Assembly: GCF_032191835.1 (NCBI RefSeq)
Contig: NC_083232.1
Location: 54,498,001-54,562,000, forward strand
Length of the DNA: 64,000 bases
Direction: 5' to 3'
DNA from: Heteronotia binoei
Taxonomy: Eukaryota
Each line of letters starts with the position of its first letter. The stretch's first letter is position 1. The notes below the pieces were generated by a model. That model was not told the origin of the DNA and searched no databases. It worked only from the letters and a program-made list of their open reading frames with translations. Positions 11,572 to 45,649 of this stretch are shown here, piece after piece. The position numbers were made by a program, and so were the translations under genes.

Positions 11572-11925
<354 letters not shown>

Positions 11926-23023: not shown

Positions 23024-23087
23024 CAATAAATTTAAAGTTGAACATAATCAAAACAATGCTCTCTAACCAACTGTCCCATGCTAAACG

Positions 23088-23225: not shown

Positions 23226-23548
23226 CTATTCCACGTATTTATTTCAAAGTAAACTTCACTAAGTTCAACATGACTTGCTTTCCAGTAAGTATCGTAAGAA
23301 TTGCACCTTGTAGACATGTAAGTCTCTGGAATGCAGCTTTTAAAGTTACAGACAAAACAGCACAGTCCTTGGACACACTCAGAATGAGCTTATCTGTAGT
23401 CGTAAGAAATTTATATTAAGCCATTTTAAGTACAATGGAAACATTTCCAAACATATCCCATATTTTTATAATCACAAAAGTTACTTATATAATAGTAAGA
23501 AGTCCAGTAGCATCTTTAAAAGCAACAAATTTTATTGCAGCATAAGCT

Positions 23549-25156: not shown

Positions 25157-25947
25157 TAATGTATGGAAGGTACAACCAAGGTACTGTGTTTCCAGCACTG
25201 GGTATTGATTTCCAAAATAAAGATCAAAGCCTTTCCTCAAATTAAGCACTGAAGTTGGCTCTTTAGAAGCCACTTCACACATGACAATTTTCCTACAGGG
25301 ATATTATTCTACAAAGGAAAATGTGGTATACCTATCATTTGTAATCAAATGCCATATTATGTTTACTGAGATAGTTCAGCTGGTTGTGTTCATCACACAT
25401 AACAACATATTTTTTTCCTCCACAAAGCAGAAACTTCACTGCGGGTTAATCGCATAAAAATGGCCTAGCTTTCAACTGCAGTACAGTGCAATGGGGTTAG
25501 TGTGGTATGAGCTGTGAAAGCACCCCTGGTCTCCATAAAACTTAGGCAGACACGGTTCTTTTTATCACTGAGTAACCACCACCATTCCTGGAAGGGCAGA
25601 TGCTACTTAAACAGCTGTTTGCTCAAAATTGCTTAATGCTGAGGATTACATCAACTTCAGACTGGTTGAATTAAAAGACTTTCACCAGTGCCTGTGCTGC
25701 AAAAAGAGCAAAACTTTAACCTACATATTACTGATGTTCAGAGTACAGAAATGATGAGATCTCCAAATACAGCAACCAAGTCCATACATGCAACATGACA
25801 AATGTGTATTGGGGGGGGGGGAGCATGGATTATAACGAGTTGAGAATTCACAAGGCTCCCCCTGAGGTCAAGTACCTGGGGGACGGCTCTGTTTTCTCCT
25901 CTGCCAGCAGAGCCACAGGTGGAGTCAGCACCGGGCGGCATCAGGTT

Positions 25948-26203
25948 GAGGAGGAGAAGAAGAGGAGCAGGAGGCTGAATTTATACCCTGCCCTTCACTT
26001 GGAGTCTCAGAGCAGCTTACAATTTCCTTTCCCTTTCCCTCCCCACAACAGACGCCCTGTGAGGTAGGCGGAGCTGAGAGAGCTCCCCAAGAACTGCCCT
26101 AGAAAGGAACAGCTCTGAGAGAGTTACAACTGACTCAAGATCATACCAATAGGTGGAGGTGTGGGGAATCAATTCCAGTTCTCCCAGATTAGAGATGTGT
26201 GCA
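25948..26203 (-). mobile_element. MIR/Squam3-like SINE
   Basis: Reverse-complement match to the 20338 copy. Confidence 0.8.
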
Positions 26204-26387
26204 GACAGTGGCGGGGCTGGCAGTGAAGGGCTCAGTGGACTACTTCTCCCACAGTAGTAGAGGATAGCAAGAGGGCTTGGCAAGAAGGAGTACCACCAAG
26301 ATCAAGCCCACATGCCTCTTTCTCTCCTCCCTGCACTCATCCACATGCTGAACAGCTCCTGCCAACTCTTCAGCATTTCCTCATCTC

Positions 26388-26665
26388 CTTTTGGTGTAGT
26401 GGTTAAGTGCACAGACTCATCTGGGAAAACAGTTTGATTCCCCACTCCTCCACATACACCTGCTGATGTGACCTTGGGTCAGCCACAAGTTCTCTCAGAG
26501 CCGTTCTGCTCAATAGCAGTTCTGGAAGAGCTCTCTCAGCCCCACTTACCTCACAGGGTGCCTGTTGTAGGTATGGGAAGAAGAAGGCGACTGTAAGCTG
26601 CTCTAAGACTCCTTTGAGTAGTAAAGGGTGGGAGTATAAATTCTATCATCTTTTCTCCTTCTCCT
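26388..26665 (+). mobile_element. MIR/Squam3-like SINE, head-to-head with the previous copy
   Basis: ggtgtagtggttaagtgc A-box head, core, and gtataaat tail. Confidence 0.8.
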
Positions 26666-26965
26666 ACCATAACGTTACTTGTTACCAGAGAGGTGTTTTT
26701 GGTTTGGTTTTGTTTTTTGGCTACTGCCTCTCACAAAGAGAGGAAATGAGAATGTGAAAAACTGGCAAAGATGAAGAGGAGAATGATAAAAAGGTCAGGG
26801 ACGGCCAGCCTGTGATCTATTTCCAGAGGTTCTGCAACCCACTTTTGAATCCCACTCAACAGACAGGGCAACACTCCCAACAAAGAATCCATAGGCAGGA
26901 TCATGTCGTCAACAACAGCTATCTCTCAATTCTAATTTTTGTATATGCCTCCAATGTATAAAAAT

Positions 26966-27427
26966 TAGGGTTGCCAGGTCCTACTCAGGAAATAACTGGG
27001 GGCTTTGGGGGTGGAGCCAGGAGCAAGGTTGTGACAAGCACAATGAACTCTGAAGGGAGTTCTTCTGGCCATCACATTTAAAGGGACTGCTCCTTTTAAA
27101 TGCTTTCCCTTTACTGGAAATAATGCAGGATAGGGGCACCTTCTTTTGGAGCTCACAGAATTGGATCTCCTGGTCCAATCTTTTTGAAAATTGGGAGGGG
27201 GGTGGGTTGAGGAGAGGCACAAGATACAGCCCTCCCCAAACTCCAGATACCCACAGACTGATTTCCATTATACCCTATGGGGACCAATCACCATAGGGTA
27301 TAATAGAGTGCCCAGCAGACATTCACTCCCCTGTAAGCTTTCTGGTAACCCTGAAGTGGTGGTGGTGGGGGGAGAAGGCCTCCAAACCACAGGATTCCCT
27401 ACCCCCAAATGGAGATTGGCAACCCTA
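26966..27427. mobile_element. MITE with TAGGGTTGCCA termini (hAT/Blackjack-like)
   Basis: 11-bp TIR tagggttgcca / tggcaacccta; no clear TSD. Confidence 0.7.
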
Positions 27428-30400
27428 AAATACAGACAAAACAAAAGGGCAGCAGAATTCCTATTGTGAATTCTGGGCTCCCTTGAAAAGGAAAGGCCTT
27501 TCTTACAACCATTCCCTGTCACAAGCCCAATGCTTGATTCATACTTAAACTAAATTGAGCAGCAGCAATAAAATTTGTGCAGATGGACATCACAGCTTTC
27601 TTAATGAACAGGCTATAAGATATGTCTACCATAATAAGGGTTTGCTGCCCTGGAATTAATCTACCATTTCTGTGGATATATTACCTACTATATATACAAC
27701 CACTAGAACTGCTAGCTAAAGTATCTTTTTGGATACATGACAATAAACATATAGCTACATGAAAATCAACTGGCTTTAATTTATTCTTAGGTATACCTGT
27801 AGATCTCATTAAAAATAAGCTATTTTTTTGTATACAAAAAATTGATAAATTACATATAGTTACATACCCCTTAATGTCAGTGTTAACTGGGACAGCTAGG
27901 TATATTGGTCAATGTTTTGGACAAGATCAGCTACATATTCTAAGTTACAGAGATTGTAGTAATTTATTTTAAACCAGAATTAGACAAGCATTTCAATCTG
28001 TGCTGCTCATGTTCAAAGCGGAAAGAATTACAATAAAATTCTGATTCATTCTTAAAAAAATAGTAAAAGGAAAGATGATAACATAAAATTACACTGAGCT
28101 GTAAATGCTTACAAAAAGGAGAGACAGAAATGTCACTAAATGTTTAGTATACGTTTTGCCTGTATGCATTTGTACATTACCAAAGGATAATTATAAGTCT
28201 GCTCTTCCTGGGCAAGCGGGGAAGATTAAGATTAGACCTCCCCCCCCCCCACCTTTTCACCATTCCCCTCAAGCAAAAGGTTAGCACAGGAAAAAAAAAC
28301 ACATTTTAATGAATTCATATACAAGCTGATTTGAGACAAAACAACAGTAATAACCACTTGCTTTTTTCTCATTTTTTAAAAAAAATGCTTGGTTTTTCAT
28401 ACTAATTGCTCTTTACTGAAATTCCTGCTTGGTTTAGCAATGATTCCTCTCTGCTACACCTTTTATTTTTTATTCCTAATCCTCTAGCTGTGCTTTTGTC
28501 TGAACTGCTCATCTGCCTCCCTGTCCCAATGTACAGCCTTGTTGGGCAAGGAGAACAGAATTCTCAGCCAAGTTGGTAGTGTGATAGCAATCCTGATGAA
28601 CTGCTGAAAAAGAAAAGTTTATTTGTATAAATATTTACTTAAGCTAGAAAATAAGTCCTTCCTTTTAAATGCAGGAACTCCAACATTTGTCTAAATTGGT
28701 CTTCTCTTGTTATAATACAGATGCCTCTTTCTTGCACACAAAAAGCTGCAGTCTTAACACAGTGGACTTTCATTCATTAGACGCTAAAAGCCAACTATGA
28801 CTGTGTTATGAATACTGTTGCCCTACACCAATATCAATAAAAATACATCACATCTCCCTCCAACAAGAGAGAAACTCTGAGTCACACATTTATACTCTAA
28901 AGAAGTCCAATTCAAAAATCATATTCTATACATCTTTCTCATCTGTTATTTCTGTCTTCAGCTGAATGACTTAAGTCTACTGTGCACATATTAATATCAG
29001 CTTTAAAACTGAAACAGCACAAGCTAATATACAGAAGTCATAAGCTAAACTACACTTTCCAGTGACCGCAGGACAATAGTGGTTTCTAAAAATCACTTCT
29101 AGGTTCATTTCATATTTTCACACTGGAACTCTAAAAATTGACTACTGGATCAAAGGGAACAGTTTAACAACATAAAAGTAAAGCCTAGCTGTTAGTGCAT
29201 ACTGGCAAACTGAAGGAAAATTTGTGCTCACAGGAAGAGTTGTGTGCAGCAAGAATGAACGTCTACAATTGGTGAAATGGTTCAATGGCATAAGCAAGCT
29301 CAGAAGCAAATATGGGAATTTTGACTATCAAAAAGACATTTTCAGAAAGAGTGGTGACTTGTACTAAGCATATCATACTGTATTAAAAAGTAGAGAAGCT
29401 TGCTTCAGTCCATTCAAACTTCCAGAAGTCCATCAAGATAAACATGATAGTCTAGAATCGGAAGCTACTTGATCTTTCAAAACCAATTAGCCAAGACATA
29501 GGGAAGTTGGACATATGGCAAAATTTTATTCCTTTAGGAACAAGACAGTAGGCAAGAAAGGGTTTATTCCACTAACAAATCAGTAGGTGGATTCCAAAAA
29601 GAACATTGCTCCCTGGTCAGACAAGAGACCACCCTGAACCTCAAATCTTGGTTTGTAAGGCCTAAGGACCCCCCTGAAAAAGCCAACACACACAAGAATA
29701 CCCCAGAAACCCCAGCTCTATGCTATAGGTCCAGTGCAAACACAAGCTTTGTCCTTCTCCCTTAGTATAAGATTGGGTCCAGGTGGGAGTGTCTGCCTCT
29801 GTCATATTATTAAACACGGGATTTAATGGCAAGATATGTAATGTCTGAGATGGAGATGATGCCCAGATAGTTGCTCTACAAATGTCTATGGCATAACCAG
29901 TGAAAAGATATGTGAAGGGTCAGGAGAATGATGAATAGACCATTCCTACAGGTAGAGGATGGCCCAATGATATGTAGGCCATAACAATGTATTTGCTGAG
30001 CTGTTTGGAGATGGTAGACCTAGAAGCTTTAAAATCCTAGGCTCCTGGCTTATAAAAGACAAAAAAAAAAATTTCAACTGCTGCATGGAAACCATTTGAA
30101 TAACATTGTTTTAATGTGGCTGGCCAAACATACTAATTGTGGCATTTATGTTCTCTAGGATTACCTGATTTGGGACAAAAATTGAAAATTAACTCTTTCA
30201 GACCTGTGAACAGTAGAGATCACATTACAGAAGAATGATGGACTAATGCGTTAAGGTGAAAAATGTGCAGTTCTTTTCTGACTACAAACTTTTATCCCAT
30301 TCTTCTGGCCATGATGGTAGCCACAGACACACAAACACAAACATTCCAGGAATGAATATGTAGAGATCTTTAGACAGTGGAAGTGAGCCTTGGGAAAAAC

Positions 30401-30496
30401 CCTAAAAATCAGAGGCAACTCCCAAGTTGGGAACCTGTGGCCCTGAGGTTTATTACAGAGGCACTTTTCAGAAATCTCTTAGTACAAGTGAGAACC

Positions 30497-30985
30497 TAGA
30501 ACATAAGAAATAAGAGAAGCCATGTTGGATCAGGCCAATGGCCCATCCAGTCCAACACTGTCACACAGCAGCAAACCCCCCCCCCCAAAAAAAAAAACAC
30601 CAACGGGTGCCATCAAGAAGTCCATCAGTGGAGCCAGGACACAAGAAGCTTGTACTAAGAAATATAGAATACTAAATTGCTCAGGGTTGTGAGAACCAGA
30701 GAGGATTGTGAGGCAATGTTTTATGACACACACGGCCAAACCAGACAAAGTCCCATTTATGTCAGATTCCAGACCTCATAACAACTGAATTCAACATGTA
30801 TTATTACTAACTGAAAATACATTATAAACTTTTTGGATAAAATCAACAACGATGAATTGATGACTTAGGGTTTTGAAGAATGAGAGGAAAAAGCTTACAG
30901 ACAGAGGCATAAGAACATAAGAGAAGCCATGTTGGATCAGGCCAATGGCCCATCCAGTCCAACACTCTGTGTCTCACAGTGGCCA
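30497..30985 (-). mobile_element. Two CR1 3'-end fragments (30497-30660 and ~30904-30985)
   Basis: Identical 50-mer ataagagaagccatgttggatcaggccaatggcccatccagtccaacact at 30510 and 30917, each next to a taagaaca-type tail. Confidence 0.7.
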
Positions 30986-31507
30986 ATATATGTGTGTGTG
31001 TATATATATCTACATATATTATGTAGCTATAGAGTAATTACAGTAACTAAATTGTCAGTCATAGATAAAAAGGAGAAAAAAGTATCTTTTGTCAATTCTC
31101 CACTCCATGCATGATTTTATAAACCTCTATCATGTTCTTTATTTTCCCTCTACTTTTCATGTTTCTCTCACTTTTTATTTCCTATTTCCTTTTTCTGTTT
31201 TTCTTTTTTATGTATGTTCTAAAAATCTTGGTATATAAAATTATAGAGTTCTACAAACTCAAGGAACTCCAGTTTCACAGAGAGATGAACCAGTTTATTC
31301 AGACCCTTCTATTTTTTATTTCCCCTTGGGACTTCTACCAGGAAATTCTGAGCCCATAAAGGACAAACTGGGATAATATGGATTATATGGAATTAGCTGT
31401 AATTGTTCTTAAGGCTGGGTCAGTGGTCTCATAGGCTCAATGGATAGCCAGTCTGATTTTCTGTTCCCAGTGGTTGTGCAGTATCACCTCTCTTTTCTTA
31501 TTAACAA

Positions 31508-32170
31508 TTAGAACAAAGTAGGAGTCTAGTAGCACCTTTAAGAGCAACCAAGTTTTATTCAAAATGTGAGCTTAATAATAATAACAACTTTTTATTTATG
31601 TCTTTCTTATGCATGCATGCATGCTTCATCAGACAATGGAATGGGGTACAGTGAGGACATTTACTTTTTAACATACATTTATACATCATTCTAGTTTGCC
31701 ATTAGAAAAAAAGAATACATTAAAATATAGTGGAAGATGGGTTTAGTATATGTAATGTTATAAACAGCCAATATCTCTTATTTGACTATGTCAATACAAA
31801 AAACATTATTCTGATACGCTATTCTGAAAAACAAATACATTGGAGTTAGGAAAATTAAGTGGACAGGAAAAACCTCTAAGAAATGTCCTCATTTTAACAC
31901 AGATTTGCTAGCAATACATTAATTAACAGACATTTATTACCGCATTTTCCCATTCTGACATATAGTAACATTGGTTTCCCACATAAATGCTATCAAATGT
32001 TCTTTCAATTTGTTAATTGCACTATTTTGCCATTGGATTCTAACTTTATACCACTTTGCATTCTAAACCACTGTCTACCAGCTATAAGTAGCTCTGCTCA
32101 CTGTGCCCCATTCCATTATCTGATGAAGTATGCATGCATACAAAAGATTACATTCTGAATAAAAAGTCGT
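31508..32170. mobile_element. PLE inverted-repeat remnant with two broken hammerheads
   Basis: The minus motif (~31566-31635) is split by a ~30-bp insertion just after GAAAG. The plus motif (32117-32152) has G12>A and helix III C>A. Confidence 0.65.
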
Positions 32171-32318
32171 TGAAATAACAAAATTAATTGATCTGATACA
32201 TAAGAATAAATTCATAGACAAGATCTCATTGGAAGCTAAGATTAAAAAACCAATGCCACGGTACAAATATTTGCAATTTCAACACCTATCCTCTTCCATT
32301 AAATTAATAGAAAGAATA

Positions 32319-33735
32319 AGACATCCACTGTCAAATCTGGATCAAAGCAGGTCGGCGCTGCTGATTCTTCTCGACCTGTCAGAAGCGTTTCACATGGTCG
32401 ACTATGATCTATTGACCCAACGCCTCACCGTCACAGGAATACGGGGGATAGCCTTGCAATGGTTTTCCTCCTTTCTCTGGGGACGGGGACAAAGGGGGAG
32501 GCTGGGTAAGCAAACCTTCATGTGACACCCACTTACATGTGGAGTGCCGCAGGAAACTATTCTTTTGCCCATATTATTTAACATCTATATGCGCCCCCTT
32601 GCCCACATTGCCCGAGGTTTCGGTCTGGGTTGTCACCAGTATGCTGATGACACCCAACTCTATCTGTTGATGGATGGCAGACCGTCCTCTGCCCCTGAAC
32701 TCCTGTCCGAGCCATTAGGAACCATAGCGGGATGGCTGCAGCAGAGCTGACTGAAGTTAAATCCAGCTAAGTCAGAGGTCCTGTGCCTGAATCGAGGGGG
32801 GAGGTTATGTACCCAGCTTCCACCCTTGGATGACACGGTTTTAGTGCCAACCAAACAAGTGAAGAGTTTGGAAGTGATCCCAGATGCCTCACTCTCTATG
32901 GAGGCCCAGGTCGCAGTTGCTGCCGGGTCTGCCTTCTACCATCTGTGGCAAATCAGGCAGCTAGCACCATATCTATCCCCCCAAGACCTGGCCACAGTGA
33001 CTCATGCAATGGTCACAGACTAGATTACTGTAACTCGCTCTATGCTGGCTTGCCGTTGAAACTGATCCGGAAACTGCAGCAGGTGCAGAACACGGCAGCT
33101 CACCTGCTGACTGCATCACCTATACGGGTGAGCATGCAGCCAGTGCTCCGTGGCCTGCACTGGCTGCCCATAGACTACCTGATCCACTTCAAGGTGTTAA
33201 TTCTGACTTTTAAGGCCTTACATGGCCTGGGTGTGGGACCGTCTCTTCCCATATATGCTCTGGAGGTCGCTTCGTTCAGCCTCCCAACATAGGCTAACTG
33301 TCCCTGGGCCAAGAGATGCCCATCTTAGCTCTACCAGGGCCAGGTCTTTTTCGGTCCTGGCCCCAACCTGGTGGAATCAGCTCCCTATAGAGATCCGGGC
33401 CCTACCTGATTTGCAAGCCTTTCGTAGGGCCTGTGAAACGGAGCTGTTCTGCCAGGTCTTCGGTGAGGCAGCGGGCATCTACCAATTAGATCAGTTGGCC
33501 TCCCCTACTGTACTATCTTGCTGTGCTGATTTGCTGAACTGTCCTGCTGCACCATCTCATCATATTGTTCTGCCGGGCTATTTTGTTCTATTGAATACTG
33601 AAACTGACTTTTATTATTATATGATTTTATTGTGAGTTTATTATTACGTTGTGTTCCACCCTGAGCCCCTATGGGGGAATGGGCGGAATATAAATAAATA
33701 ATGATAATATAAATAATAATAATAATAATAATAAA
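32319..33735 (+). mobile_element. L2-clade LINE, 5'-truncated
   Basis: LLILLDLSEAFHMVDY, PILFNIYM, CHQYADDTQLY, RLDYCNSLY; (aat)n tail at ~33700-33735. Confidence 0.9.
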
Positions 33736-34061
33736 AACTTCAAGAATATCTTAAAACAAATTGACAGTGGAGAAAAAGGCACTATATCGAAATTATATTT
33801 TAGAAGAACAAAAGCTACACAGATCACTTTCATATCATCAGAAATGGGAGAAAGAATGCAATATTAAATTTTCACCTCAATATTGGGATTCTATATGGAA
33901 TGCTTATGAAAATATAACTAGTGTTATTTTGATTAGATGGCAAAATTTCAAACTTATGTCATGGTATCAAAGAATTCAGGTTTTCACGGCTGGTAACATC
34001 ATTAGGGTTTGTAGAATCTTTCGGGATCAAGTGCCGTGTTCTACTGGAGAAAGTTTTCCTT

Positions 34062-34102
34062 CCAGACGTTTCGTTCTCAGCTGCGGAGAACATCCTCAGT
34101 GG
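34062..34102 (-). ncRNA. Minimal type I hammerhead ribozyme motif, intact, on the IGF2BP3 pre-mRNA strand
   Basis: CCA-CUGAGGA-U-GUUCUC cgcagcu GAGAAC-GAAA-CG-U-C/UGG: GUC triplet, predicted cut between 34065 and 34064. Confidence 0.8.
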
Positions 34103-34196
34103 CGTTGCAGCCGGAGCAGGCGCTCAGACCTTCTTGGCTGTTGTGCATTGAGTCACAGCAGCCAAGAAGGTCTGAGCGCCTGCTCCGGCTGCAACG

Positions 34197-34237
34197 CCAC
34201 TGAGGATGTTCTCCGCAGCTGAGAACGAAACGTCTGG
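34197..34237 (+). ncRNA. Minimal type I hammerhead ribozyme motif, intact (mirror copy)
   Basis: Same sequence as the minus copy; CTGAGGA at 34200-34206, GAAA at 34227-34230, predicted cut at 34234/34235. Confidence 0.8.
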
Positions 34238-34756
34238 AAGGAAAACTTTCTCCAGTAGAACACGGCACTTGATCCCGAAAGATTCTACAAACCCTATGTC
34301 ATGGTACTCTACCCCACAAAAATTGGTTTATTTTGGAAAATAAATAGATTGACGATAGCATACAAATGGAAAGCAGAAGCAGCTCCTTCTCTAATTTTAT
34401 GGCATTTGAAGATATGGAATATATATATATATATATATAAAATGGTCAAGCTAACTGAAATGAACAAAAGATTAATAGACCCAGATTCAGATATATTTTT
34501 TTCTATCTGGTATCCAATATTAGAATACCTACAGAAATATAGTGAAATCTCTAAGATAGTAACAACACTCCAGTTATAAATATAAAGTAGAAGATTTTCT
34601 ATTATTTTCTCCCACAGAATTGTTAATTTGAAATTAATCACTCCTTCTTAGTCATAACAAATGTTTGGTAATACCTTCTCTTTCTGTAATTTTAGAAATC
34701 GTTCTATATATGTGTGTATATTACTTTGGATTGTAATATATTAAAATTTTTAAAAA

Positions 34757-34912
34757 AGTAGCTCTGCTCACTGTACCCCATTTTATTGTCTGATGAAGTA
34801 CGCATGCATATGAAAGCTTACATTCTGAATAAAACATTGTGGGTCTTAAAGGTGCTCCTGGACTCCTACTTTGTTCTACTGTTTCAGACCAACATGGCTG
34901 CCCACTTGGATC
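34757..34912 (+). mobile_element. Solo PLE terminal fragment with hammerhead motif (34787-34822; core intact, stem II weakened)
   Basis: UGU-CUGAUGA-A-GUACG caug CAUAU-GAAA-GC-U-U/ACA followed by the same tail as the 1141-1710 element. Confidence 0.7.
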
Positions 34913-34984
34913 TTATTAACCATTGCCTTTGAAGCCAAGGTTGCTACAAGTGAGTCCACTAGGGGGTGCATCAGATGGGACATA

Positions 34985-35721
34985 CCGTATTTTTCGCACC
35001 ATAAGACGCACTCCCCCCCCCCCAAAAAAAAAGTGAGGGGGAAAGTGTGTGTGTCTTATGGAGCGAAGGTACCATACGTACCTTCCTCGGGGGGGGGGGG
35101 GGGTTGCTTCCTCTGTGCCTGGCTTCAGCTGCTGCTTATAGCAAGTGCCGGGATCGGAGGCTTGGCGAAGCGCTGGGTTTGCGGAGGGGGTGTGTGCTTT
35201 CTCTGTGCCTGTCTGCCTGGCTTCAGCTGCTGCTTATAGCAAGGGCTGGGATCGGAGGCAGCCAAGCCTCCGATCCCAGCACTTGGTATAAGCAGCAGCT
35301 GAAGCCAGGCACAGAGGAAGCACCCCTCTCTCCGCATACCCAGCGCTTCCCGAAGCGCTGGGTTTGCGGGGGAGGGGTGCTTCCTCTGTGCCTGTCTGCC
35401 TGGCTTCGGCTGCTGCTTATAGCAAGGGCTGGGATCGGAGGCAGCCAAGCCTCCGATCCCAGCCCTTGCTATAAGCAGCATCTGAAGCCAGGCACAGTGG
35501 AAGCACACACACCCCTCCGCAAACCCAGCACTTCGCGAAGCGCTGGGTTTGCGGAGGGGGCGGCATGCTTTTTCCGTGCCTGGCTGGGAGACAAGCGGCG
35601 AGATCGCTCCCTGCGAAGTGCTGGGTTTGCGGTGGGGGAGGAGGGAGCGATCTCGCCCTTGTCAGCCAGCCAGGCACCTGTGTCTTATGGTCAGAAGCGT
35701 CCAATGGACCGAAAAATATGG
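34985..35721 (+). mobile_element. Tc1/mariner (pogo-like) MITE with internal hairpin repeats
   Basis: TA|ccgtatttttcg ... cgaaaaatatgg|TA; internal ctgggatcggaggc-agccaa-gcctccgatcccag hairpins. Confidence 0.8.
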
Positions 35722-36129
35722 TAATTTTCTCTTCTAATAAACTCCCTAGTAAGGTTGCTGGTACCTTCACACTAGAGATAGACACGAACCAATCCACAAA
35801 TTGTGATTTGTGCATGTATCAGGCTAATTTGTTGTATGACCTTAGCTGGTTTGGCACTTGGTGATTCATTTAGTTCGTTTTTGCAGTTTTGTTTTTCCAC
35901 CCAGTCTGGCACTGGTTCAATCAATTCCTAGCCGACACTGGGAATGGACTTCTGGGAGCCCTAGAAACACCCACAGCAGTTGTCCACAGCTTGTCAGCTC
36001 TGTGAGCCAATCACGGAGCTACCATTCTGCTCTATGGGAGCAGGCACCCTGACTCAGCTGCTTTCACTTTGCAGCATGAAGAGAGAAGAGTTATCATGGG
36101 AACTGATGTCCTGGGGGTATCTCCTTTGA

Positions 36130-36810
36130 GGGACTATAACTCAGACATTCCAAAATCAATCTTCAACAAATTTGGAGACGGGTGAAGGAGAGCCTCCTGA
36201 AGACTCCCAGTGAGTTTTACACCTCCCAAACAAAACAAACCATGAACCAGTTTGGGCAACCACATGGATCACAAACCAATATGAACCACAATTTCCCTGG
36301 TTTGTGCCCATCCCGAGACAGTGAGGCTACCTCTCATGGTGTCATTCTGCCAAGGAGGGTGAACTATCAAGAAGAAAATTTTTCCTCCATCAGCTGCCCA
36401 GGAAATGCTTTTCAGATCAGAAATATATCTAGTATTCCTAATCATGTCCATGTCCTGGCTTGGGCAGATATAGTCAGGAGAAGGATCGAAGAAACCCAGG
36501 TGACAGAGATAGGTCCCTTCCTTTAGTAGGTATGGAGGTTTTCCCTTGTAGTTCTAGAGCTGATCCCTTTCCACAATACTCTCAGAGTCTTTTAGATGAA
36601 TAGTAGTGTGAACCCTCTTAGACCAATAGTGGTATAAACTAGGGAGCCTCTAGCCACCAATGCCACCCCCAAAAACAATAAAAAATATGCCAAATCTTCT
36701 TATCCTCAAAAGATTCAGCCCAAGGAAGACCTGATTCCTTTGATCAGTAGGCAGAGACCAGAACCAGGATAGTTTCCTCCACAAGAGGCTACATTCTTTT
36801 GGCCCTGCCT
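36130..36810 (-). mobile_element. Possible very old DIRS methyltransferase-recombinase fossil
   Basis: Degenerate ILVLVSAY*, GFLRSFS*LYLP and MTP*EVASLS occur in the order expected for ILVAPWW / FLRGL / ITSARRVSEL. Similarity is weak. Confidence 0.3.
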
Positions 36811-36825
36811 CCTCAGTTGAAATAA

Positions 36826-37025
36826 GTGCTGGACTAGAATTTGGAACCCAGGTTCAAATGCCGACTCTGCCACATAAACTTGCTGAGTGACCTTGGACCA
36901 GTCACACTCAGCCTAACGTACCTCACAGGATTATTGTGAGAATAAAACAAAGAGAGAAGAACCATGTAAGCCACTTTGGATACACACTTGGGAGAATCTG
37001 GAGTATAAATGAGGCAAACAAATAA
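36826..37025 (+). mobile_element. Old MIR-like SINE
   Basis: ccaggttcaaat...gtgaccttgg...cagcctaacgtacctcacagg...gtataaat. Confidence 0.7.
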
Positions 37026-37103
37026 GTTAACTGTTTCCTGACCTTCTAGAACTAAAGAATGTAATATTTTCATGGAGTTTTTAAAACTATACATGACAAT
37101 CAT

Positions 37104-37456
37104 TTGGAATACTGCATACAGTTCAGATCACCCTATTTAAAAAAGGACATCACAGAAGTGGAAAAAGTACAGAAGAGGACAACCAAGATGATTATGGGAT
37201 TGGACCACCAAACCTATGAGGAAAGGCTGAAGAGGCTAGGACTTTTCAGTTTAGAAAAAAGACAACAAAGGTGGGCATATAGAGGTTTATAAAATTATGT
37301 ATGGAGTGGAGAAAGATAAATTTTTCTCTTTCTCCCAAAATATTAGACCTTGAGGGCATTTGATGAAGCTGGTGGGCAGTAAATTCAACCAGACAAAAGG
37401 ATATATATCTTTATATAACAAGTGATTAAAATGTGGAATTTGCAGCTAGAGGATGT
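37104..37456 (+). mobile_element. CR1 ORF2 C-terminal fragment; resumes at ~41487-41740
   Basis: [32 protein letters not shown]...[16 protein letters not shown]; ends at gaggatgt and continues after the nested inserts with gatgcccacaggcacagacagctttaaa. Confidence 0.85.
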
Positions 37457-40400
37457 ATTTTTTTATTTATTTCTCGTATTTATATCCCGATCAAACAATT
37501 TAAAACAAGTTAAAATGATCTAAAACAATTTTGGTACTCGTGTTGGTACTACTAAATCCAGTGATGTTGGGCATCTACTTATACTGTAATTTAACTAAAG
37601 GCAAGTCGAAATAGAGCTGTTTCACAGGCCTTGAGGAACTGGGCAAGGTCCCGCAAGGTCCTTACATCTTCTGGGAGTTGGTTCCACCAGTGGGGGGCGG
37701 CAATTGGGAAGGCTCTTTCTCTGGTAGCCTTCAGTCTCGCCTCCCTCGGCCCGGGGATTGACAGTAAATTCTGCGATCCAGATCTGAGTACCCTCTGGTG
37801 AACATGTGGGGAGAGACGGTCCCTAAGGTAGACAGGTCCTTGGCCATATAGCGCTTTAAAGGTAATAACCAGCACTTTGTAGTGAATCCAGAATACTATT
37901 GGCAGCCAGTGCAGTTCCCGCAGCCTTGGCTATATGTGCTCCTGTATAGAGAGACCCAATAACAGCCTGGCTGCTGTGTTCTGCACCAACTGCAGTTTCT
38001 GGATCTGAGACAAAGGCAGCCCCATGTAGAGGGCATAAAGTAGTCTAGTCTCAAGGTGATCGTTGCATGGATCACAGTTGCTAGGTCACTGCGCTCCAGG
38101 AAGGGGACCAACTGTCGCACCCACCTAAGGTGAAAAAAGGCGGATTTCACAGTGGCTGCTATCTGGGCCTCCATTGCCAATGTGGGCTCCAGTAGCACCC
38201 CCAAGCTTCTGACTTTGGGCACCAATATCAGTGGTGCCCCATCAAAAACTGGTAGAGGGATTTCCCTTCCCAGACCACCGCGACTCAGGCAAAGGACCTC
38301 TGTCTTCATCGGATTCAGCTTTAGACGACTTAGCCTGAACCACCCTGCCACGGCTTGCAGTGCCAGGACTAAATTTTCTGGGGTAGAGGCCGGCCATCCA
38401 TCCATCAGCAGATAGAGCTGGGAGTCATCAGCATACTGATGGCAACCCAGCCCAAATCTCCGGACAATCTGGGCAAGGGGGTGCATATAGATATTGAACA
38501 ACATTGGGGAGAGCACCACCCCGAGGCACCCCACAATTAAGCGGATGTCTCTGGGACAACTGTCCCCCGATCGCCACCTTTTGTCCCTGACCAAGGAGAA
38601 AAGAGAAGAGCCATTGCAGGGCCAACCCCTGAATCTCTGCATCGGCAAGGCGGTGGACCAGCAACTGATGGTTGACCGTGTCAAACGCTGCCGACAGGTC
38701 CAACAACATCAGCACAGCTGACCCGCCTCTATCCAGATGCCACTGAAGATCATCTACCAGGGCGACCAGCACTGTGTTCATCCCATGACCTGGGTGAAAG
38801 CCAGACTGCTGTGGATCTACGATGGAAGCATCCTCCAGAAAGCTCTGTAACTGCAGCACTACTGCCCTCTCAATGATTTTACCCAGAAAGGGTAAATTCG
38901 AGACCAGCCGATAGTGTGCAGATTCAGCTGGATCTAATGTTGGTTTTTTCAAGAGGGGGTGGACTACTGCCTCTTTGAGGGGCCTTGGAAAAAGCCACTC
39001 AGAGGGATCTATTTACAATATCCCGTATTGGATATCGAAGCTCCATCCGGCACGCTTTAATCAGCCTGGATGGGCAAGGGTCCAAATCACACGTGGTTGG
39101 GCGCGCAGTAGAGAGGATTCTGTCAACTTCCTCTAGGCTAAATGTTGTAAAACTGTCTAAAGCTGATCCGGAAAACAGGCACGGAGCCTCGAGCTTGCAT
39201 ACTGTTTCAACTGCGGCAGGGAGGTCACGGCGGAGCGATGAGACCTTATCTGCGAAGAAGGTTGCAAAAGCCTTGCAGCCAATGTCCAATTCCCTACAAT
39301 TTGGTTTGCCTTGAAGCAGAGTTGTAAGGGTCCAAATAATACTAAATAATTGAGCGGGGCGTGAATCCGCAGATGCAATCTTGGCCGCAAAGTAAGCTTT
39401 CTTTGTGGCTTTGACTGCCATCTCATAGGACCTCATATACTCTCTATAAGATGTTCTGGTCGCTTCGTCACGAGTATGCCATCACAGCCTCTCTAGCCGT
39501 CTGAGCCTGCGTTTCATCAATTGCAGTTCCATATTGCACCACATCATCTTTGAACGAGGGCGCAGAGGGTGCCGGGGAGCAATCTCATCAATGGCCATGG
39601 TGAGCTGATTTTGCCAGGACTCAACCAGGTCATCGAGAGAGTCGCTGGGGGCCAAGAATCCCGCAGTTCCCTCTGGAACCGTACTGGGTCCATTAGGTTC
39701 CGCAGGTGAGCTAAAATACGCTCGCCGCCTAAACAGGTTTGGGGTGGCACATCCATATGGGCCTTCAGGACATAGTGGTCTGACCATGACACTGCATCAG
39801 CAGTAATTCGGGCCACTGTAATCCCCGACGTGAAGATCAAGTTCAGCATGTGCCCGGACTGATGTGTGGATGTTGTTACAAATTGAGAGAGTCCTAGCAT
39901 AGCCATGGATGACACTAGGTCCATCGCCTTATTGGAGTTTGCGTCATCAGCAAGGACACTGAAGTCACCGAAGATTAAAAGTCTTGGGTGTTCCAATGCC
40001 CAGCCTGTTGTGGCCCCCATCAGGGACGATAAGGCACTAGCTGGTGTGTTAGACGGTCGGTACACCAGCCAGATCGCCAAACCCTCTCCAACATCCCACT
40101 TCAGACCTGCACATTCAATGCCATCGATCTCTGGAGTCAGGAGAGCCCTGAAGGAGTAAGCCTCCCGTATGAATAGGGCCACACCTCCCCCCCGCCTGCT
40201 AGTCTGTGACTGGTGAAACACTGAATACCCTGGGGGGGCTACTTCTGGGGGGGCTACCGTCTCCCCATCATGCATCCAGGTCTCAGTCACGCATGCCAGG
40301 TCCATGTCCTGTTCACACAGGAAATCCCGAAGGACTGAGGTCTTATTAATAATGGACCTGGCATTGCATAACACCAGTGACGGAGGCGAGTAATTCAACC

Positions 40401-40900
40401 TGACCCCACCACCTGTCACCGTTGGGATGGGACACAGACTGGAAGGGGGCTGAGCATCTTCACATCTCAGCCGCCTTCCCTTACATTTATGTGTGTTCCC
40501 ACTGTCATACCTTCCCCTCCCCAGGAGTAGTGGGATCCCCAGGCCGGTCATTCCCCCCCCCCCCACTGGTCTCCGCAGTCGCCTCAGACCAGTATATAGG
40601 ATGCCCTACTATGACCCTGTATTCTAGTTCTAATTTCTGCTGTCCCTGCCCTTGCTAACTAAGAACACCCTCCCCAATCAACCCATCAACCCCTGCCAAT
40701 TAACCTCCCCTAAACGGTTAATTAATTCTAAAACCCCTCTTAATTTCAATCCCATTAATTAATTAGTTAATAAATAATCAATTTAACCCTAATAGCCAAT
40801 TAAATTCTAAACCCCTACACCCACTGATTTACACTCCCCAACTTAAGCAGCCAATAACTGTATCAAATTTCTCAATAGCTAATTAATTCAATGACAATCC
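37457..40900 (-). mobile_element. L2-clade LINE with near-complete ORF2 (AP endonuclease plus RT), frameshifted
   Basis: LVLCNARSIINK...ACVTETW, YRPS, GDF, WSDH (endonuclease); YRLVSNLPFLGKIIE, CHQYADDSQLY (RT); (ttta)n tail at 37457. The 5' limit is approximate. Confidence 0.92.
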
Positions 40901-40924
40901 CAACCCAAGTTAATTCCTCCTATA

Positions 40925-41485
40925 GTGATGACAACTTCCTTTTCCAGAAATTGAAAAAGAAAACAAGAGGATCTGCTATCTTGAACTTGATTCTCACCAA
41001 CAAGGAAGAATTGATTGATGAAGTGGAAATAGTGGGCACCTGGGCAGTAGTGATCATGTGATTTTGGAATTTACAGTCTTAGGGAAGGAAAAGCTATATG
41101 TAGTCAGACTTATAGGTTGGACTTCAGAAAGGCAAACTTCAACAAAATTAGAACTATACTGGATAAAATCCCATGGTCAGAAATACTTAAGAAGAAGGGG
41201 GTTCAAGAGGGGTTGGAATTTCTTAAAAGCGAAATACTGAAAATGCAATCACAGACGATCCCTATGAGAAGAAAAAATGGAAGAAGCCTAAAGAAGCCAA
41301 TAGGCTTCCTCGGGAGGTGGTGGGTTCTCCTTCCTTGTAGGTTTTTAAACAGACTAGATGGCCATCTGACAGCAATGAGGATCCTGGGAATTCAGGGGGA
41401 GATATTTGTGGGTTTCCTGCATTATGCAGGGGGTTGGATTAGATGACCCTGGAGGTGCCTTCCAACTCTATGTTTCTATGGTTCT
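40925..41485 (+). mobile_element. Second CR1 copy, internally deleted (endonuclease-RT linker fused to 3' end)
   Basis: ILNLILTNKEELIDEV...DFRKANFNKIRTILDKIPW...KKP joined directly to aggcttcctcgggaggtggtggg...ttccaactctatgtttctatg. Confidence 0.8.
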
Positions 41486-42813
41486 TTGATGCCCACAGGC
41501 ACAGACAGCTTTAAAGGGGGATTAGATAGATTCATGGAGATTAGGTCTAAAAATGGCTACTAGCCATGGCGACTAAAGGGAACCTGAATGTTCAGTTGCA
41601 GTCAACCACTGAATCCCAGTGCTGGGAGGCAACACTGGGGGAAGGTCTCAGCCTCTATGCCCTGCTGGTGGCCCTCCAGAGGAAATGGTTGGCCGCTGGG
41701 TGAGATAGGATGCTGGACTAGATGGATCACTGGTCTGACATAGATTTCTGTTCCCTCCAAAATCCACATTTTGTTATTGGGAAGGGAGCCCATTTTTCCA
41801 TGGCCTCCAAGTTTCTGGAAATTTTACATCTCTAACCCTAAGCGCAGTCACAGATATAATACATCCAGTGATGACAAATGACAGTACTACCCAAGCATGG
41901 ATGCATACAACTGTCAGTGCTCTAGAAATGCCTATGAGATGGAGTGGACTGTTACATTATGAGCCTTCAGATAGTCAGAGCTGCCTTGTTTCCCTAGTAC
42001 CATGCAAACATACATTATTAAAAGGTTAGCAAAAAAGGGTGGAGGTTGCACAAGTGTCTCTCAAGATGCCACTAAATTTGTCATGGCACTTTAGTAAGAG
42101 ACTGCAGTAAAGGTGGAACTGGAAATAGTGACAAAATTCAAATACTGCAAAATATTTTTTTTTTGGGGGGGGGGAGTATACCTGGGACATAGCTGGCTTT
42201 CTTTTAGTGAAACCAAAGAAGACAGAAGCGGATTGCTACTTACCTCTCAACACCTTTATTTTAAATCATAAAGTTAATTTCAGCATAGGTCCATAACAAC
42301 ATCAGACCAGTCTGCTTCTGCAAAGACCTCAGAATTTACCCATGTAACATCTCAGGTCATGAAGATGAAGCGCAATGCCCTGCACAAGTTCTGCTTCCCA
42401 GGTTAATAGCAGGAGTCACAGAAATTCATAATCTTGATGAAAGTAAAGTATTTTTGCCTTCTGAGATTTACAACTGGCAGAATGACTTACATACCTATAC
42501 AATAGATGACCAATAACCCTTGAGTTCTAGACAGTGAATAAGTGGTGTTCTATGTTCTAAATGATTGCTTTCCCAATTCTTCCCTTTCCCAGTCTCAAAC
42601 ATTTCTTATACCACTGCATTCTAGGGATAGTAGTTCTGCCATGGATTGAGCAATTCTAGTTCCACAGATCTGGATGTATTATAGAAAGAACTGTAACGCT
42701 CTCAAAATAAGTAACCTGCATGTGTGGACTGTGCAGGGTTCATTTACTGAAACGTTAAGTGTGCACATTGGTATAGTTACCTATGAACAAAAACCAGAGC
42801 CAGTCCCACATAG

Positions 42814-42894
42814 GCAATCCTAGGAATACTTTCCTGTAAGTAAGACCAATTAACTATAATGGGACTTGGCTTGAGTAGACCTGTTTAGGATTGC
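42814..42894. repeat. Short palindromic MITE-like repeat
   Basis: gcaatcct ... aggattgc termini, 81 bp. Confidence 0.5.
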
Positions 42895-44116
42895 TCCCAT
42901 AGACAATCAAAAGACTTATTATTTGTATCCTGAAGTGAAAAATACATGTGTTCTGGGTCTGTTGCAAATTTAAATAGATTCTTATCAGATTCTACAAAGA
43001 ATCTAAAGTAGGAAAGATTGAGACTGTGAAAATTTTATTCCATATTTTGTCAATACTTGTTGGAATGCTGAGACTAAATTTAATTTGTCCTTGGGTACAC
43101 TGTTTTGAAGTCAGAACATTAATTAGATTGTGTATTACTAGTGTAGATGTGTGTGTAAGAGTGGTTTCTATGCATACATATGCTAGTTGATTCATAGCCC
43201 CATCATATTTAGGAATGCTTGTAAAGCTTGGAAGTACTGTGTATATGCAACACATACAATTTCTGAACTGACTTGGGTAAGCAAGTTGAGGTTCCCTCTC
43301 ATATTTTTCCTTATTAGTGATATGCAAGCCAAATCCCATTCTGTTGCAGTTAGCCTTCTACCACTAAGAGAGATATTCAAGACATTACAGATCACTAGAA
43401 CTGTCATGGTTTTCTTTAGCCTTCAGAGAAGTTTTTCCCCCCCAATTCTGATTTTCACAGATAAATATACTCCTATAAGCAGCTTCCAGATGGTACCTCC
43501 TCTGTTCTGGATCTCTGTTGTCTTTTCTGGATATAAAATGGACTAAAACCCAAAAACTTAAAAGCTTACAAAATTTGACTTCTGCATCTGTTATTTTCAT
43601 TGCAATTTGCTATTATTATTTTGGAGTTGACTCCAATAGCTGCCCCTTGCTGTTATTAGGGAGAAGAGACATATTATAAATTTCCTTCTATGGCCTTGTG
43701 TGGGAGGCAGCAGGATTTCAGAGGCACAAGAAAAACAACACCCATAGCAAAATGTCAGAACGACATAGTACTTTGTGAGAGAGAGGACAAGCAGAAGGCA
43801 CAGGAAGAAGTAAAGAAAGAGGACTAAGGAAATCTAAGAAAAGTATGAACTATAATCAAGCAGCAAGAAAGCAGTGGAGAAACTACAATACAGTATGATG
43901 TGTATATAATTGATTAAATTAAGATCAAAAACCTGTGACATCTTAATAAATCCTCTCAATTTCATTATTGCTTTGGTCTGTGGCCTTTAAATAACATGTT
44001 CTTTATACCACCAAGAATTGACAGTGCTGGCAAATGCCAACTTTCAGGGCATCCCTTCACTGAGGTTATCTATGATCGAAACTGACCTCCACAGTGAGCC
44101 CTTTGATAACAGAAAG

Positions 44117-44327
44117 TCAACATGGCATAGTAGCTAGAGTGTTGGTCTAGGCTCTGAGAGACCCACTGTCAAACCCCATGTTGCCATGGAAGCTTGCTGG
44201 TTAACACTGGGTTGGTCATTCTGCCTCTGCCTAACCTACATCACTGGGATTGTGGGAGAAGAAAATGGAAGAGAAGAAAACGTTGTAAAATGTTGTGGAG
44301 AACAAATCGGGATATAAATAACTAAAT
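44117..44327 (+). mobile_element. Old MIR-like SINE
   Basis: catggcatagtagctagagtgttgg head and gggatataaat tail. Confidence 0.65.
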
Positions 44328-44679
44328 AGGTCAAGCTACCCATACCAAATGCTTGCATTTTTAAAATTATCACATAAATAAAAAAGCTCAGCAACTACTG
44401 AGCTGCAACAAAATGTAAATTCTTCCTCAGGGTAGGCATTAACTACAATTCCACAAAACAAAGAACTCAACATAAGCCATATTTAAACAAAACACAGTAG
44501 CATCAGAACTACCTATTAAAAGTAAAAGACCAGAATTTCCCATACTAATCCACTGTCTATGTTTAGTCTGATCTTGTCCAAAAGATTTAATCAGTACATC
44601 AAAATCAAGCAATGTAGAAAATGTTTCCTCTAAGTTTGAAAGGAACTATAGCTATATCTATGGCCCCAGAAGAGAATTA

Positions 44680-45636: not shown

Positions 45637-45649
45637 TACATTCTGGGAA

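What the first reader, a model, noticed from the sequence alone, without database searches (positions are those of the whole stretch)
33967..34296. Self-masking twin hammerhead: a 143-bp-arm palindrome places an intact GUC ribozyme in the IGF2BP3 pre-mRNA
Seen: a 294-bp inverted repeat with one mismatch and an 8-nt loop, inserted with a 10-bp TSD into an L1 remnant. Each arm holds CCA-CUGAGGA-U-[6-bp stem II]-GAAA-CG-UC/UGG. Established: Penelope-like elements carry minimal type I hammerheads with a palindromic helix III that cleave mainly as dimers, and conserved intronic hammerheads exist in amniotes (RECK, CCDC186/C10orf118). Inference: on either strand the antisense arm is transcribed before the ribozyme arm. 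The ribozyme therefore emerges with its full complement already made and should be locked in a ~143-bp duplex, which acts as a built-in safety catch. The same duplex is a likely ADAR or dsRNA-sensor substrate, and editing could in principle unmask the ribozyme.
Basis: partly seen in the sequence, partly recalled or inferred. Interest (0 to 1): 0.8.

Follow-up and report, generated by a model that had tools for sequence, protein, structure and literature searches.

The report
Ordinary young Penelope-like retrotransposon insertion
The palindrome is real, but it is the standard footprint of a very young Penelope-like retrotransposon insertion, one of at least 569 near-identical head-to-head copies in this genome, and nothing indicates that it acts as a regulated ribozyme in the IGF2BP3 gene.

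Summary
Two 143-nt arms (34003-34145 and 34154-34296) differ at one position, 36 extra nt lie on the left only, and a 10-12-bp target-site duplication (TSD) flanks the whole. Each arm carries a minimal hammerhead ribozyme (HHR) motif.

It is a short copy of a Penelope-like element (PLE). Longer copies of the family encode a reverse transcriptase (RT) plus a GIY-YIG motif, about 60% identical to PLE proteins of Anolis and beetles. The ribozyme overlaps the ORF start exactly as in the published Anolis element PAc. Its helices covary across five PLE lineages.

Three features are published hallmarks of PLE integration: a short copy, an adjacent inverted copy, and a 30-40-bp "tail" at one end only. 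The genome holds 5,974 exact copies of the 41-nt ribozyme and at least 569 head-to-head junctions like this one.

The insertion lies in an intron of IGF2BP3 (minus strand). The pre-mRNA would carry one sense ribozyme and its complement, folding into a hairpin of -303 kcal/mol. So masking is real but trivial:
- This dimer-type ribozyme has no helix III of its own, and no second sense copy lies within 64 kb.
- RNA-seq shows no reads on the flanks and no read ends at the cleavage site.
- The copy is too young to be conserved.

Known kind, low interest.

The parts
33955..33966 (.). Left copy of the target-site duplication (TATGTCATGGTA; 10-12 bp).
   Evidence: TSDs of mostly 12-13 bp (8-16) flank the whole inverted-plus-main composite in 16 of 17 sampled loci.
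33967..34002 (-). 36-nt PLE 'tail'. This is the 3'-terminal extension of the main copy, present at this end only (q144-179, ORF positions about +92 to +127).
   Evidence: All 17 sampled inverted arms stop at q130-152 and none reaches q179. This matches the 30-40-bp one-sided tail of PLEs (PMC8557442), which is explained by two adjacent RT start sites (PMC11167929).
33967..34153 (-). Main PLE copy, 187 nt, in sense to the IGF2BP3 pre-mRNA. It runs from the family's recurrent 5' end (ACTCAATG...) to the tail end. It contains the last part of the pseudo-LTR, the hammerhead, and the first 127 nt of the PLE ORF.
   Evidence: 100% identical over 179 nt to another locus (L002) and 99% identical to 38 others. 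Aligned to a longer copy, L063, at its positions 2617-2768.
34062..34102 (-). Minimal hammerhead in the main copy. Helix I is CCA/UGG. The core is CUGAGGA, with a bulged U. Helix II is GUUCUC/GAGAAC, then GAAA, and ACGU is a palindromic helix III half-site. The predicted cut is between 34065 (C17) and 34064. The PLE start codon AUG (34093-34091) is A9, the bulged U and G10.1.
   Evidence: Covariation across five PLE lineages: 97.8% of cells paired, 7 of 9 pairs with compensatory changes. Features match the min-HHR of PMC4209133.
34154..34296 (+). Inverted, tail-less PLE copy (q1-143), head-to-head with the main copy. It carries G at q5 where the main copy carries A.
34197..34237 (+). Second minimal hammerhead, on the plus strand and therefore antisense to the IGF2BP3 transcript. 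The predicted cut is between 34234 and 34235.
34295..34306 (.). Right copy of the target-site duplication. Its first 2 nt are ambiguous with the arm end.
33800..34340 (+). Older LINE-like ORF2 C-terminal remnant interrupted by the insertion (approximate extent).
   Evidence: the frame reads ...WQNFKLMSWY | STPQKLVYFGK* across the empty site; an RNA-library contig (run X1) joins 33962 to 34304 without the insertion, 3 mismatches in 105 nt, so it is probably a paralogous copy.
8440..55881 (-). Host gene context. IGF2BP3 coding exons lie on the minus strand inside open frames 55780-55881 (RNIPPHLQWEV), 21747-21830 (VNVTY), 11572-11925 (RRM2 end and KH1) and 8440-8592 (KH2). The insertion lies in the intron between the first two.
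   Evidence: best PDB matches are IGF2BP3 chains 7vkl, 6gqe, 6fq1.

Best explanation
The feature is a single, very recent retrotransposition event of a Penelope-like element (PLE) related to Anolis PAc (Poseidon). It inserted into an old LINE fragment in an intron of IGF2BP3.

Shown:
- The 187-nt main copy (minus strand) runs from the family's recurrent 5' end to the tail-bearing 3' end.
- A 143-nt tail-less copy lies head-to-head with it.
- One 10-12-bp target-site duplication brackets both copies.
- The hammerhead is the PLE's own minimal, dimer-type ribozyme, which overlaps the start codon of the PLE ORF.

Inferred mechanism:
- The PLE enzyme nicks both target strands, and each 3'-OH primes reverse transcription at one of two adjacent internal start sites. 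This was shown in vitro for PAc.
- Here both cDNAs ran to the 5' end of a short template RNA and were joined head-to-head.
- The arms differ at a subfamily-diagnostic base, so they were not copied from each other.

The palindrome is therefore a by-product of integration. In the pre-mRNA it would fold into a long perfect hairpin that buries the single sense ribozyme. That ribozyme could not form helix III by itself anyway. No host function is indicated. The most likely consequence, if any, is generic: a long intronic dsRNA that ADAR or Dicer could act on.
For: Family identity:
- Longer copies encode RVT_1 plus a GVYKIPCSCGAVYIGTT GIY-YIG motif.
- The best protein relatives are PLE proteins (PF00078, PF28514, PF26215) of Anolis and beetles at about 60% identity.

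Layout identical to PAc:
- The AUG lies inside the HHR and the cut site is 26 nt after the AUG.
- The Anolis copy L064 ends at +118. Published values are +26 and +111-118.

HHR:
- Helices covary in 5 lineages.
- It has the published min-HHR traits.

Architecture:
- 18 of 30 sampled loci have an adjacent inverted copy. Its outer end is always at q130-152, whereas the main copy reaches q179.
- TSDs of mostly 12-13 bp (8-16) bracket the composite in 16 of 17 loci.
- The literature describes exactly this: short copy, inverted copy, one-sided 30-40-bp tail, and cleavage and extension of both strands with two RT start sites.

Abundance:
- 569 head-to-head junctions of this type, against 0 for the control pattern.
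- 5,974 exact 41-nt HHR copies, against 0 for the control.

Youth:
- 100% and 99% identity to other copies.

Arms from separate templates:
- q5 is A in the main copy and G in the inverted copy in all 3 loci whose main copy has A5.

Hairpin:
- -303.4 kcal/mol, z = -34.
Against: - No full-length copy was recovered. Clade assignment within PLEs therefore rests on similarity to the Anolis element, not on a tree.
- The two-strand priming model is taken from in-vitro work on a relative. Snap-back or template-switch models are disfavoured only by the q5 difference in 3 loci.
- The 30-locus sample was ranked by similarity to the query and is biased.
- Absence of function cannot be proven. The RNA runs gave no reads on the flanking intron, so expression, editing or cleavage at this locus were not actually measured.
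Confidence: 0.93

Rival explanations
1. The palindrome is a functional 'self-masking' device. The antisense arm keeps an active ribozyme silent in the IGF2BP3 pre-mRNA, and ADAR editing or unwinding can unmask it to cleave the transcript.
For: - The geometry and thermodynamics are right. The antisense arm is transcribed first on both strands and the HHR is fully paired in a -303 kcal/mol hairpin.
- The left-arm HHR is in sense to the gene.
- The HHR core is intact and evolutionarily constrained within PLEs.
Against: - The architecture is generic: at least 569 such junctions and a published PLE hallmark.
- The copy is essentially unmutated and so very young, which leaves no time for exaptation.
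- The min-HHR lacks helix III. The one tested min-HHR was undetectable as a single motif and weak as a dimer, and the PAc HHR needed its own protein.
- Each transcript has only one sense copy, and there is none elsewhere in the window.
- No read ends at the cut site, and none were found in the published Anolis data either.
- Editing A to I in the duplex would also damage the ribozyme's own conserved A residues.
Confidence: 0.03
2. Hairpin-RNA source. Transcribed head-to-head PLE copies like this one are diced into small RNAs. These target the PLE's 5' ORF and RT-initiation region and so feed back on the family, as a consequence of the by-product rather than a designed function.
For: - A perfect 143-bp duplex is predicted.
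- Hundreds of such loci exist.
- In Drosophila, rearranged Penelope copies with long inverted repeats coincide precisely with the siRNAs detected (PMC3681739).
Against: - No small-RNA data were examined.
- This locus shows no flanking RNA-seq coverage in the runs laid.
- Vertebrate somatic cells process long dsRNA poorly (my own knowledge).
Confidence: 0.15
3. The feature is not a retrotransposition product at all. It is either an assembly artefact (a chimeric palindromic read) or a foldback/MITE-type DNA transposon with long terminal inverted repeats.
For: - Near-perfect palindromes are a known long-read artefact.
- TIR plus TSD superficially resembles a MITE.
Against: - A clean TSD is present here and in 16 of 17 other composites.
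- 569 independent junctions have different filler sequences.
- The ends are asymmetric, with a tail on one side only.
- Arm length varies from locus to locus and the arms continue into PLE coding sequence.
- The arms themselves are the 5' end of an RT/GIY-YIG ORF.
Confidence: 0.02

Closest known systems
PAc, the Poseidon-type Penelope-like element of Anolis carolinensis (Frangieh et al. 2024, PMC11167929)
   Same: - RT plus GIY-YIG ORF at about 60% amino-acid identity to an Anolis PLE protein.
- The HHR overlaps the start codon and the cut site is 26 nt after the AUG.
- 3' ends fall about 90-130 nt into the ORF at two alternative sites, which produces the 'tail'.
- Nucleotide-level similarity around CCCGAAAGA...ACAA(C)AACCCT.
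   Different: - A different species and family.
- Helix II and the 1.1-2.1 pair carry compensatory substitutions.
- End positions are +91-100 and +127 here, against +111-118 for PAc.
- Nothing biochemical has been tested for the gecko family.
Generic PLE insertion architecture: pseudo-LTRs, inverted 5'-truncated copy, one-sided 30-40-bp tail (Craig et al. 2021, PMC8557442; Evgen'ev & Arkhipova 2005)
   Same: A short copy, an adjacent inverted copy forming an inverted repeat, a 36-nt tail at one end only, and a TSD.
   Different: This copy is at the extreme short end of the range, 187 and 143 nt with no coding capacity. The inverted repeat therefore makes up almost the whole insertion and looks like a stand-alone palindrome.
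Minimal PLE hammerheads (Cervera & de la Pena 2014, PMC4209133; from memory, Lunse et al. 2017 on dimeric cleavage)
   Same: - Conserved core.
[quoted passage not shown]
- A G10.1-C11.1 pair.
- A long helix II (6 bp) and a short helix I (3 bp).
- Palindromic positions 15.2-16.2 with no loop 3, which implies dimer-only activity.
   Different: None of substance. Helix I at 3 bp is at the short end of the published range (published examples: 4-5 bp, and 2 bp in D. virilis).
Conserved intronic hammerheads of amniotes: HH9 in RECK and HH10 in C10orf118/CCDC186 (Rfam RF02275 and RF02277; my own knowledge)
   Same: A type-I hammerhead located in an intron and in sense to the host gene.
   Different: - Those are canonical monomer-competent ribozymes conserved across amniotes.
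- Here no Rfam hammerhead model matches, helix III is missing, and the insertion is lineage-specific and very young.
LINE-1 twin-priming inversions (Ostertag & Kazazian 2001; my own knowledge)
   Same: An inverted 5' segment created by priming cDNA synthesis from both target strands within one TSD-flanked event.
   Different: In L1 the two segments are different parts of the element, so no palindrome forms. Here both cDNAs start at nearly the same internal site and copy the same stretch, which gives a near-perfect palindrome.
Animal non-LTR retrozymes (Cervera & de la Pena 2020, PMC7229834; Li et al. 2026 preprint)
   Same: HHR-bearing, non-coding derivatives of PLE pseudo-LTR sequence.
   Different: Retrozymes are direct tandem repeats whose HHR pairs excise circular RNAs. 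This is an inverted pair with one sense HHR per transcript, so no unit can be excised.

Membership tests
Penelope-like element (EN+ PLE) insertion | Family members encode a PLE-type reverse transcriptase with a C-terminal GIY-YIG endonuclease. | tested here: met
   - The open frame in L063 (755 codons between stops, its true start not reached) hits RVT_1 at E = 5e-10 and contains GVYKIPCSCGAVYIGTT.
- Top homologues carry PF00078, PF28514 and PF26215, at about 60% identity to Anolis and beetle PLE proteins.
- The Pfam GIY-YIG model itself did not score, so the endonuclease is recognised by motif and by homologues only.
Penelope-like element (EN+ PLE) insertion | A hammerhead motif in the pseudo-LTR at the ORF junction. 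| tested here: met
   The AUG lies within the HHR as in PAc.
Penelope-like element (EN+ PLE) insertion | Short copies, often with an adjacent inverted 5'-truncated copy. | tested here: met
   Window. 18 of 30 sampled loci. 569 junctions genome-wide.
Penelope-like element (EN+ PLE) insertion | A 30-40-bp tail at only one end of the insertion. | tested here: met
   36 nt at 33967-34002. None of the 17 sampled inverted arms carries it.
Penelope-like element (EN+ PLE) insertion | A target-site duplication bracketing the whole composite (target-primed integration). | tested here: met
   10-12 bp here, mostly 12-13 bp (8-16) in 16 of 17 other composites.
Penelope-like element (EN+ PLE) insertion | Placement in the Penelope/Poseidon clade by RT phylogeny. 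| not tested
   Only similarity ranking and the shared HHR/ORF layout with the Anolis element. No tree was built.
Hammerhead ribozyme, minimal PLE type (min-HHR) | Catalytic core C3-U4-G5-A6-N7-G8-A9, G12-A13-A14, the A15.1-U16.1 pair, and H17 at the cleavage site. | tested here: met
   CUGAGGA ... GAAA-CG-UC|U read directly. These columns are invariant in 5 lineages.
Hammerhead ribozyme, minimal PLE type (min-HHR) | Helices I and II supported by covariation, with G10.1-C11.1 and an unpaired nucleotide 5' of helix II. | tested here: met
   97.8% of cells paired, 7 of 9 pairs with changes on both sides, 0 of 500 shuffles reach the score, slid controls 33-40% paired.
Hammerhead ribozyme, minimal PLE type (min-HHR) | No helix III or loop 3 in cis, and palindromic positions 15.2-16.2 that allow a dimer. 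| tested here: met
   ACGU immediately after GAA. Cofolding of two copies gains 11 kcal/mol over two monomers. However, the predicted dimer pairs the helix II strands between molecules rather than forming the canonical ACGU helix III.
Hammerhead ribozyme, minimal PLE type (min-HHR) | Self-cleavage activity. | not testable with these tools
   The only indirect evidence is negative: no pile-up of read ends at 34064/34065 in family-wide RNA-seq.
Rfam hammerhead families (RF00163, RF00008, RF02275-7) | A match to the covariance model at or near the gathering score. | tested here: not met
   No hammerhead hit in the whole window at gathering threshold, nor at E<=10 on the region or on a single arm. 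This is expected for motifs without helix III.
Conserved amniote intronic hammerheads (RECK HH9, CCDC186 HH10) | Orthologous conservation in the same intron across species. | tested here: not met
   The copy is 99-100% identical to dozens of dispersed copies and sits inside a lineage-specific repeat. Its age is at most a few million years (inference). Orthologous loci in other species were not examined directly.

The most novel reading that the evidence does not exclude
The head-to-head PLE palindromes, about a thousand in this genome, could be conditionally active RNA elements. In host transcripts the long duplex would silence the single ribozyme and serve as an ADAR/Dicer substrate. Unwinding, or pairing in trans with abundant PLE RNA that supplies the second hammerhead half, would then allow cleavage of host pre-mRNAs such as IGF2BP3 when the PLE family is expressed.
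Probability: 0.03. Interest if true: 0.7.

Novelty: new member of a known kind. Interest (0 to 1): 0.15.

Why it matters
For the host gene it probably does not matter. It is a 340-bp neutral insertion in a large intron.

The value lies at family level. This gecko genome carries a very young and abundant PLE family. It has 5,974 identical ribozyme copies, and its hundreds of TSD-flanked head-to-head copies have one tailed and one tail-less end. These copies look like an in-vivo record of the two-strand priming and dual RT start sites so far shown only in vitro for the Anolis element. That could help PLE mechanism studies, but it does not change what is known about hammerheads or IGF2BP3.

Tried and rejected
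- Rfam scans gave only sub-threshold miRNA-precursor hits such as MIR820 and mir-8515. These are caused by any long perfect hairpin, so I rejected them as miRNA genes.
- MITE/foldback transposon and assembly artefact were rejected on the asymmetric tail, the variable junctions, the TSDs and the PLE coding continuity.
- Snap-back copying of one arm from the other is disfavoured. The arms differ at a subfamily-diagnostic base in all 3 informative loci.
- Recovering a full-length element failed.
- Read laying on three raw RNA-seq runs and one contig set:
  - Depth was essentially zero on both flanks, so nothing locus-specific could be said about expression, cleavage or editing.
  - Reads on the element come from other copies. 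For example, 33974 A>T appears in essentially all reads, and the loose ends are heterogeneous.
  - The A>G and T>C differences seen cannot be told apart from differences between copies.
- The X1 contig that skips 33962-34304 is not clean evidence of an empty allele. It has TATA in place of G at the joint and 3 mismatches in 105 nt, so it is probably a paralogous LINE copy.
- A loose HHR pattern scan of the window gave four hits outside the element, near the chance expectation of 2.2. I did not pursue them.
- The IGF2BP3 assignment could not be tested against full-length proteins with the length-restricted search. It rests on PDB chain matches and on diagnostic residues recalled from memory.

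Full report
**1. Observation**

The sequence is as described.
- The repeat finder gives arms 34003-34145 and 34154-34296: 143 nt, one mismatch, 8 nt between them.
- There are 36 further nucleotides on the left only (33967-34002).
- The whole is bracketed by TATGTCATGGTA at 33955-33966 and 34295-34306.
- The motif CCA-CUGAGGA-U-GUUCUC...GAGAAC-GAAA-CG-UC|UGG is on the minus strand at 34102-34062, with a predicted cut between 34065 and 34064. It is also on the plus strand at 34197-34237.
- Rfam finds no hammerhead anywhere in the window. This holds at gathering threshold and also at E<=10 on a single arm. The sub-threshold miRNA hits are what any long hairpin produces.

**2. What it belongs to**

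The 179-nt minus-strand unit has at least 448 candidate matches in the 2.63-Gb genome. The 40 that were scored are 99-100% identical to it.

Walking upstream through longer copies leads into an ORF:
- It has an RVT_1 domain and the GIY-YIG motif GVYKIPCSCGAVYIGTT.
- Its best relatives are Penelope-like element (PLE) proteins of Anolis carolinensis and beetles, at about 60% identity.

In this family the PLE start codon is A9, the bulged U and G10.1 of the hammerhead. The upstream reading frame stops at the UGA of the CUGA box.

An Anolis PLE locus (L064) has the same layout:
- The AUG lies in the HHR and the cut site is 26 nt after the AUG.
- The element ends at +118.
- These are the values published for PAc (PMC11167929).

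**3. The ribozyme motif is genuine**

I aligned the gecko motif with those of Anolis, Podarcis, a ladybird and a weevil.
- The core is invariant.
- Helix II and helix I covary. 97.8% of cells are paired and 7 of 9 pairs have changes on both sides.
- No shuffle out of 500 reaches the covariation score, and the slid controls pair at 33-40%.
- That paper tested one such motif, from S. mansoni. As a single copy it gave no detectable cleavage, and as a dimer only low cleavage.
- The PAc ribozyme cleaved only when its protein was added, and no cellular reads ended at its cut site.

**4. The palindrome is the standard integration footprint**

The literature says that PLE insertions are 5'-truncated. 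They often have an inverted 5'-truncated copy adjacent, which forms an inverted repeat. They carry a 30-40-bp tail at only one end (PMC8557442). The tail is the stretch between two adjacent internal reverse-transcription (RT) start sites, and the enzyme cleaves and extends both DNA strands.

The window copy fits point by point, and so does the family:
- In the 30 best loci, 18 have an adjacent inverted copy.
- Its outer end is always at q130-152, while the main copy reaches q179.
- TSDs of mostly 12-13 bp (8-16) bracket the composite in 16 of 17 loci.
- Genome-wide, 569 loci match the head-to-head junction pattern, against 0 for the reversed control.
- There are 5,974 exact copies of the 41-nt hammerhead, against 0 for the control. 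About a third of the first hundred listed form minus/plus pairs, most 60-160 nt apart.

The 8-nt 'loop' is simply the 5'-most 8 nt (ACTCAATG) of the longer arm.

**5. Mechanistic inferences**

These are inferred, not shown.
- The inner ends of both arms cluster at (CC)ACTCAATG. An AAATA stretch lies about 30 nt upstream, and CCACTCA resembles an initiator. [quoted passage not shown]
- On that reading, the short copies are run-off cDNAs from the 5'-proximal RT start site.
- In all 3 loci whose main copy has A at q5, including the window, the inverted arm has G. The arms were therefore templated separately rather than copied from each other. That fits priming on both strands.

**6. Host context**

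IGF2BP3 exons lie on the minus strand at about 55.8, 21.8, 11.9 and 8.5 kb. PDB chain matches favour IGF2BP3. The insertion is therefore intronic, and the left-arm ribozyme is in sense to the gene.

The predicted RNA of 33967-34296 is a single hairpin of -303.4 kcal/mol (z = -34) with the hammerhead fully paired. The hammerhead on its own folds at only about -9 to -10 kcal/mol. Masking is therefore real but trivial:
- Each transcript holds a single sense ribozyme that lacks helix III.
- No other copy of the family lies in the 64-kb window.

**7. RNA evidence**

I laid three raw RNA-seq runs and one contig set on 33700-34560.
- Depth was essentially zero on both flanks.
- Depth was about 3-230 on the element, with heterogeneous loose ends at its borders. 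Variants such as 33974 A>T are present in essentially all reads.
- These reads therefore come from other copies.
- No position showed an accumulation of read starts or ends, including the cut site.
- Editing could not be assessed.

**8. Comparison and verdict**

This is a new copy, from a possibly undescribed gecko family, of a well-described kind.

The proposed 'safety catch' is a by-product shared by hundreds of copies. The analogy to the conserved RECK and CCDC186 ribozymes fails on structure, on model match and on age. The dsRNA consequence of Penelope inverted repeats, production of siRNAs, has already been described in Drosophila (PMC3681739).

Interest is low for the finding itself. The family may be of modest use as a natural record of PLE integration.

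Noticed in passing
window 34146-34153 (minus ACTCAATG); G000 genome-wide: The inner (5') ends of both main and inverted PLE copies cluster within a few nt at (CC)ACTCAATG, about 187 nt from the tail end. An AAATA stretch lies about 30 nt upstream and CCACTCA is initiator-like. This is probably the transcription start of the PLE, so the short copies are run-off cDNAs from the 5'-proximal RT start site.
   Followed up: partly
window 34141 against 34158; loci L002 and L024: The only arm-to-arm mismatch (q5: A in the main copy, G in the inverted copy) recurs in all 3 loci whose main copy has A5. The two arms therefore come from different template molecules, or from different repeats of one template, and not from snap-back copying.
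   Followed up: partly
G000 genome-wide: A very young and abundant PLE family. There are 5,974 exact copies of the 41-nt hammerhead and many copies 99-100% identical over 179 nt. Older subfamilies at 91-97% identity also exist. RNA-seq reads cover the family at substantial depth.
   Followed up: partly
L066:1678-1712 and 4287-4321 (ladybird beetle Henosepilachna contig): The closest protein relative of the gecko PLE (62% identity) is from a beetle. Its hammerhead is nearly identical, including loop 2 (CGCAGUU against CGCAGCU) and helix I. This may reflect horizontal transfer between arthropods and squamates.
   Followed up: no
alignment A1: The 'bulged' nucleotide between hammerhead positions 9 and 10.1 is the U of the PLE start codon (GAUG) in all five lineages aligned. 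In the gecko family the upstream frame also ends at the UGA of the CUGA box. Ribozyme core and translation signals are therefore superimposed.
   Followed up: partly
window 33858-33962 joined to 34304 onward, in a contig of run X1: A contig from an RNA library reads through the insertion site without the PLE. It has TATA instead of G at the joint and 3 mismatches in 105 nt. It is probably a paralogous LINE copy rather than an empty allele.
   Followed up: no
window about 32370-33300, plus strand: An open stretch encoding a CR1/L2-like reverse transcriptase (ALLILLDLSEAFHMVDYDLL...YADDTQLY) lies just upstream of the LINE remnant that received the insertion.
   Followed up: no
locus L059 (oriented positions 2625-2913) and locus L027: Some copies show partial direct tandems of the last roughly 150-175 nt (pseudo-LTR formation). 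Others show two independent PLE insertions within 1 kb.
   Followed up: no
window 34412-34449: A (TA)n microsatellite lies 110 nt downstream of the insertion.
   Followed up: no
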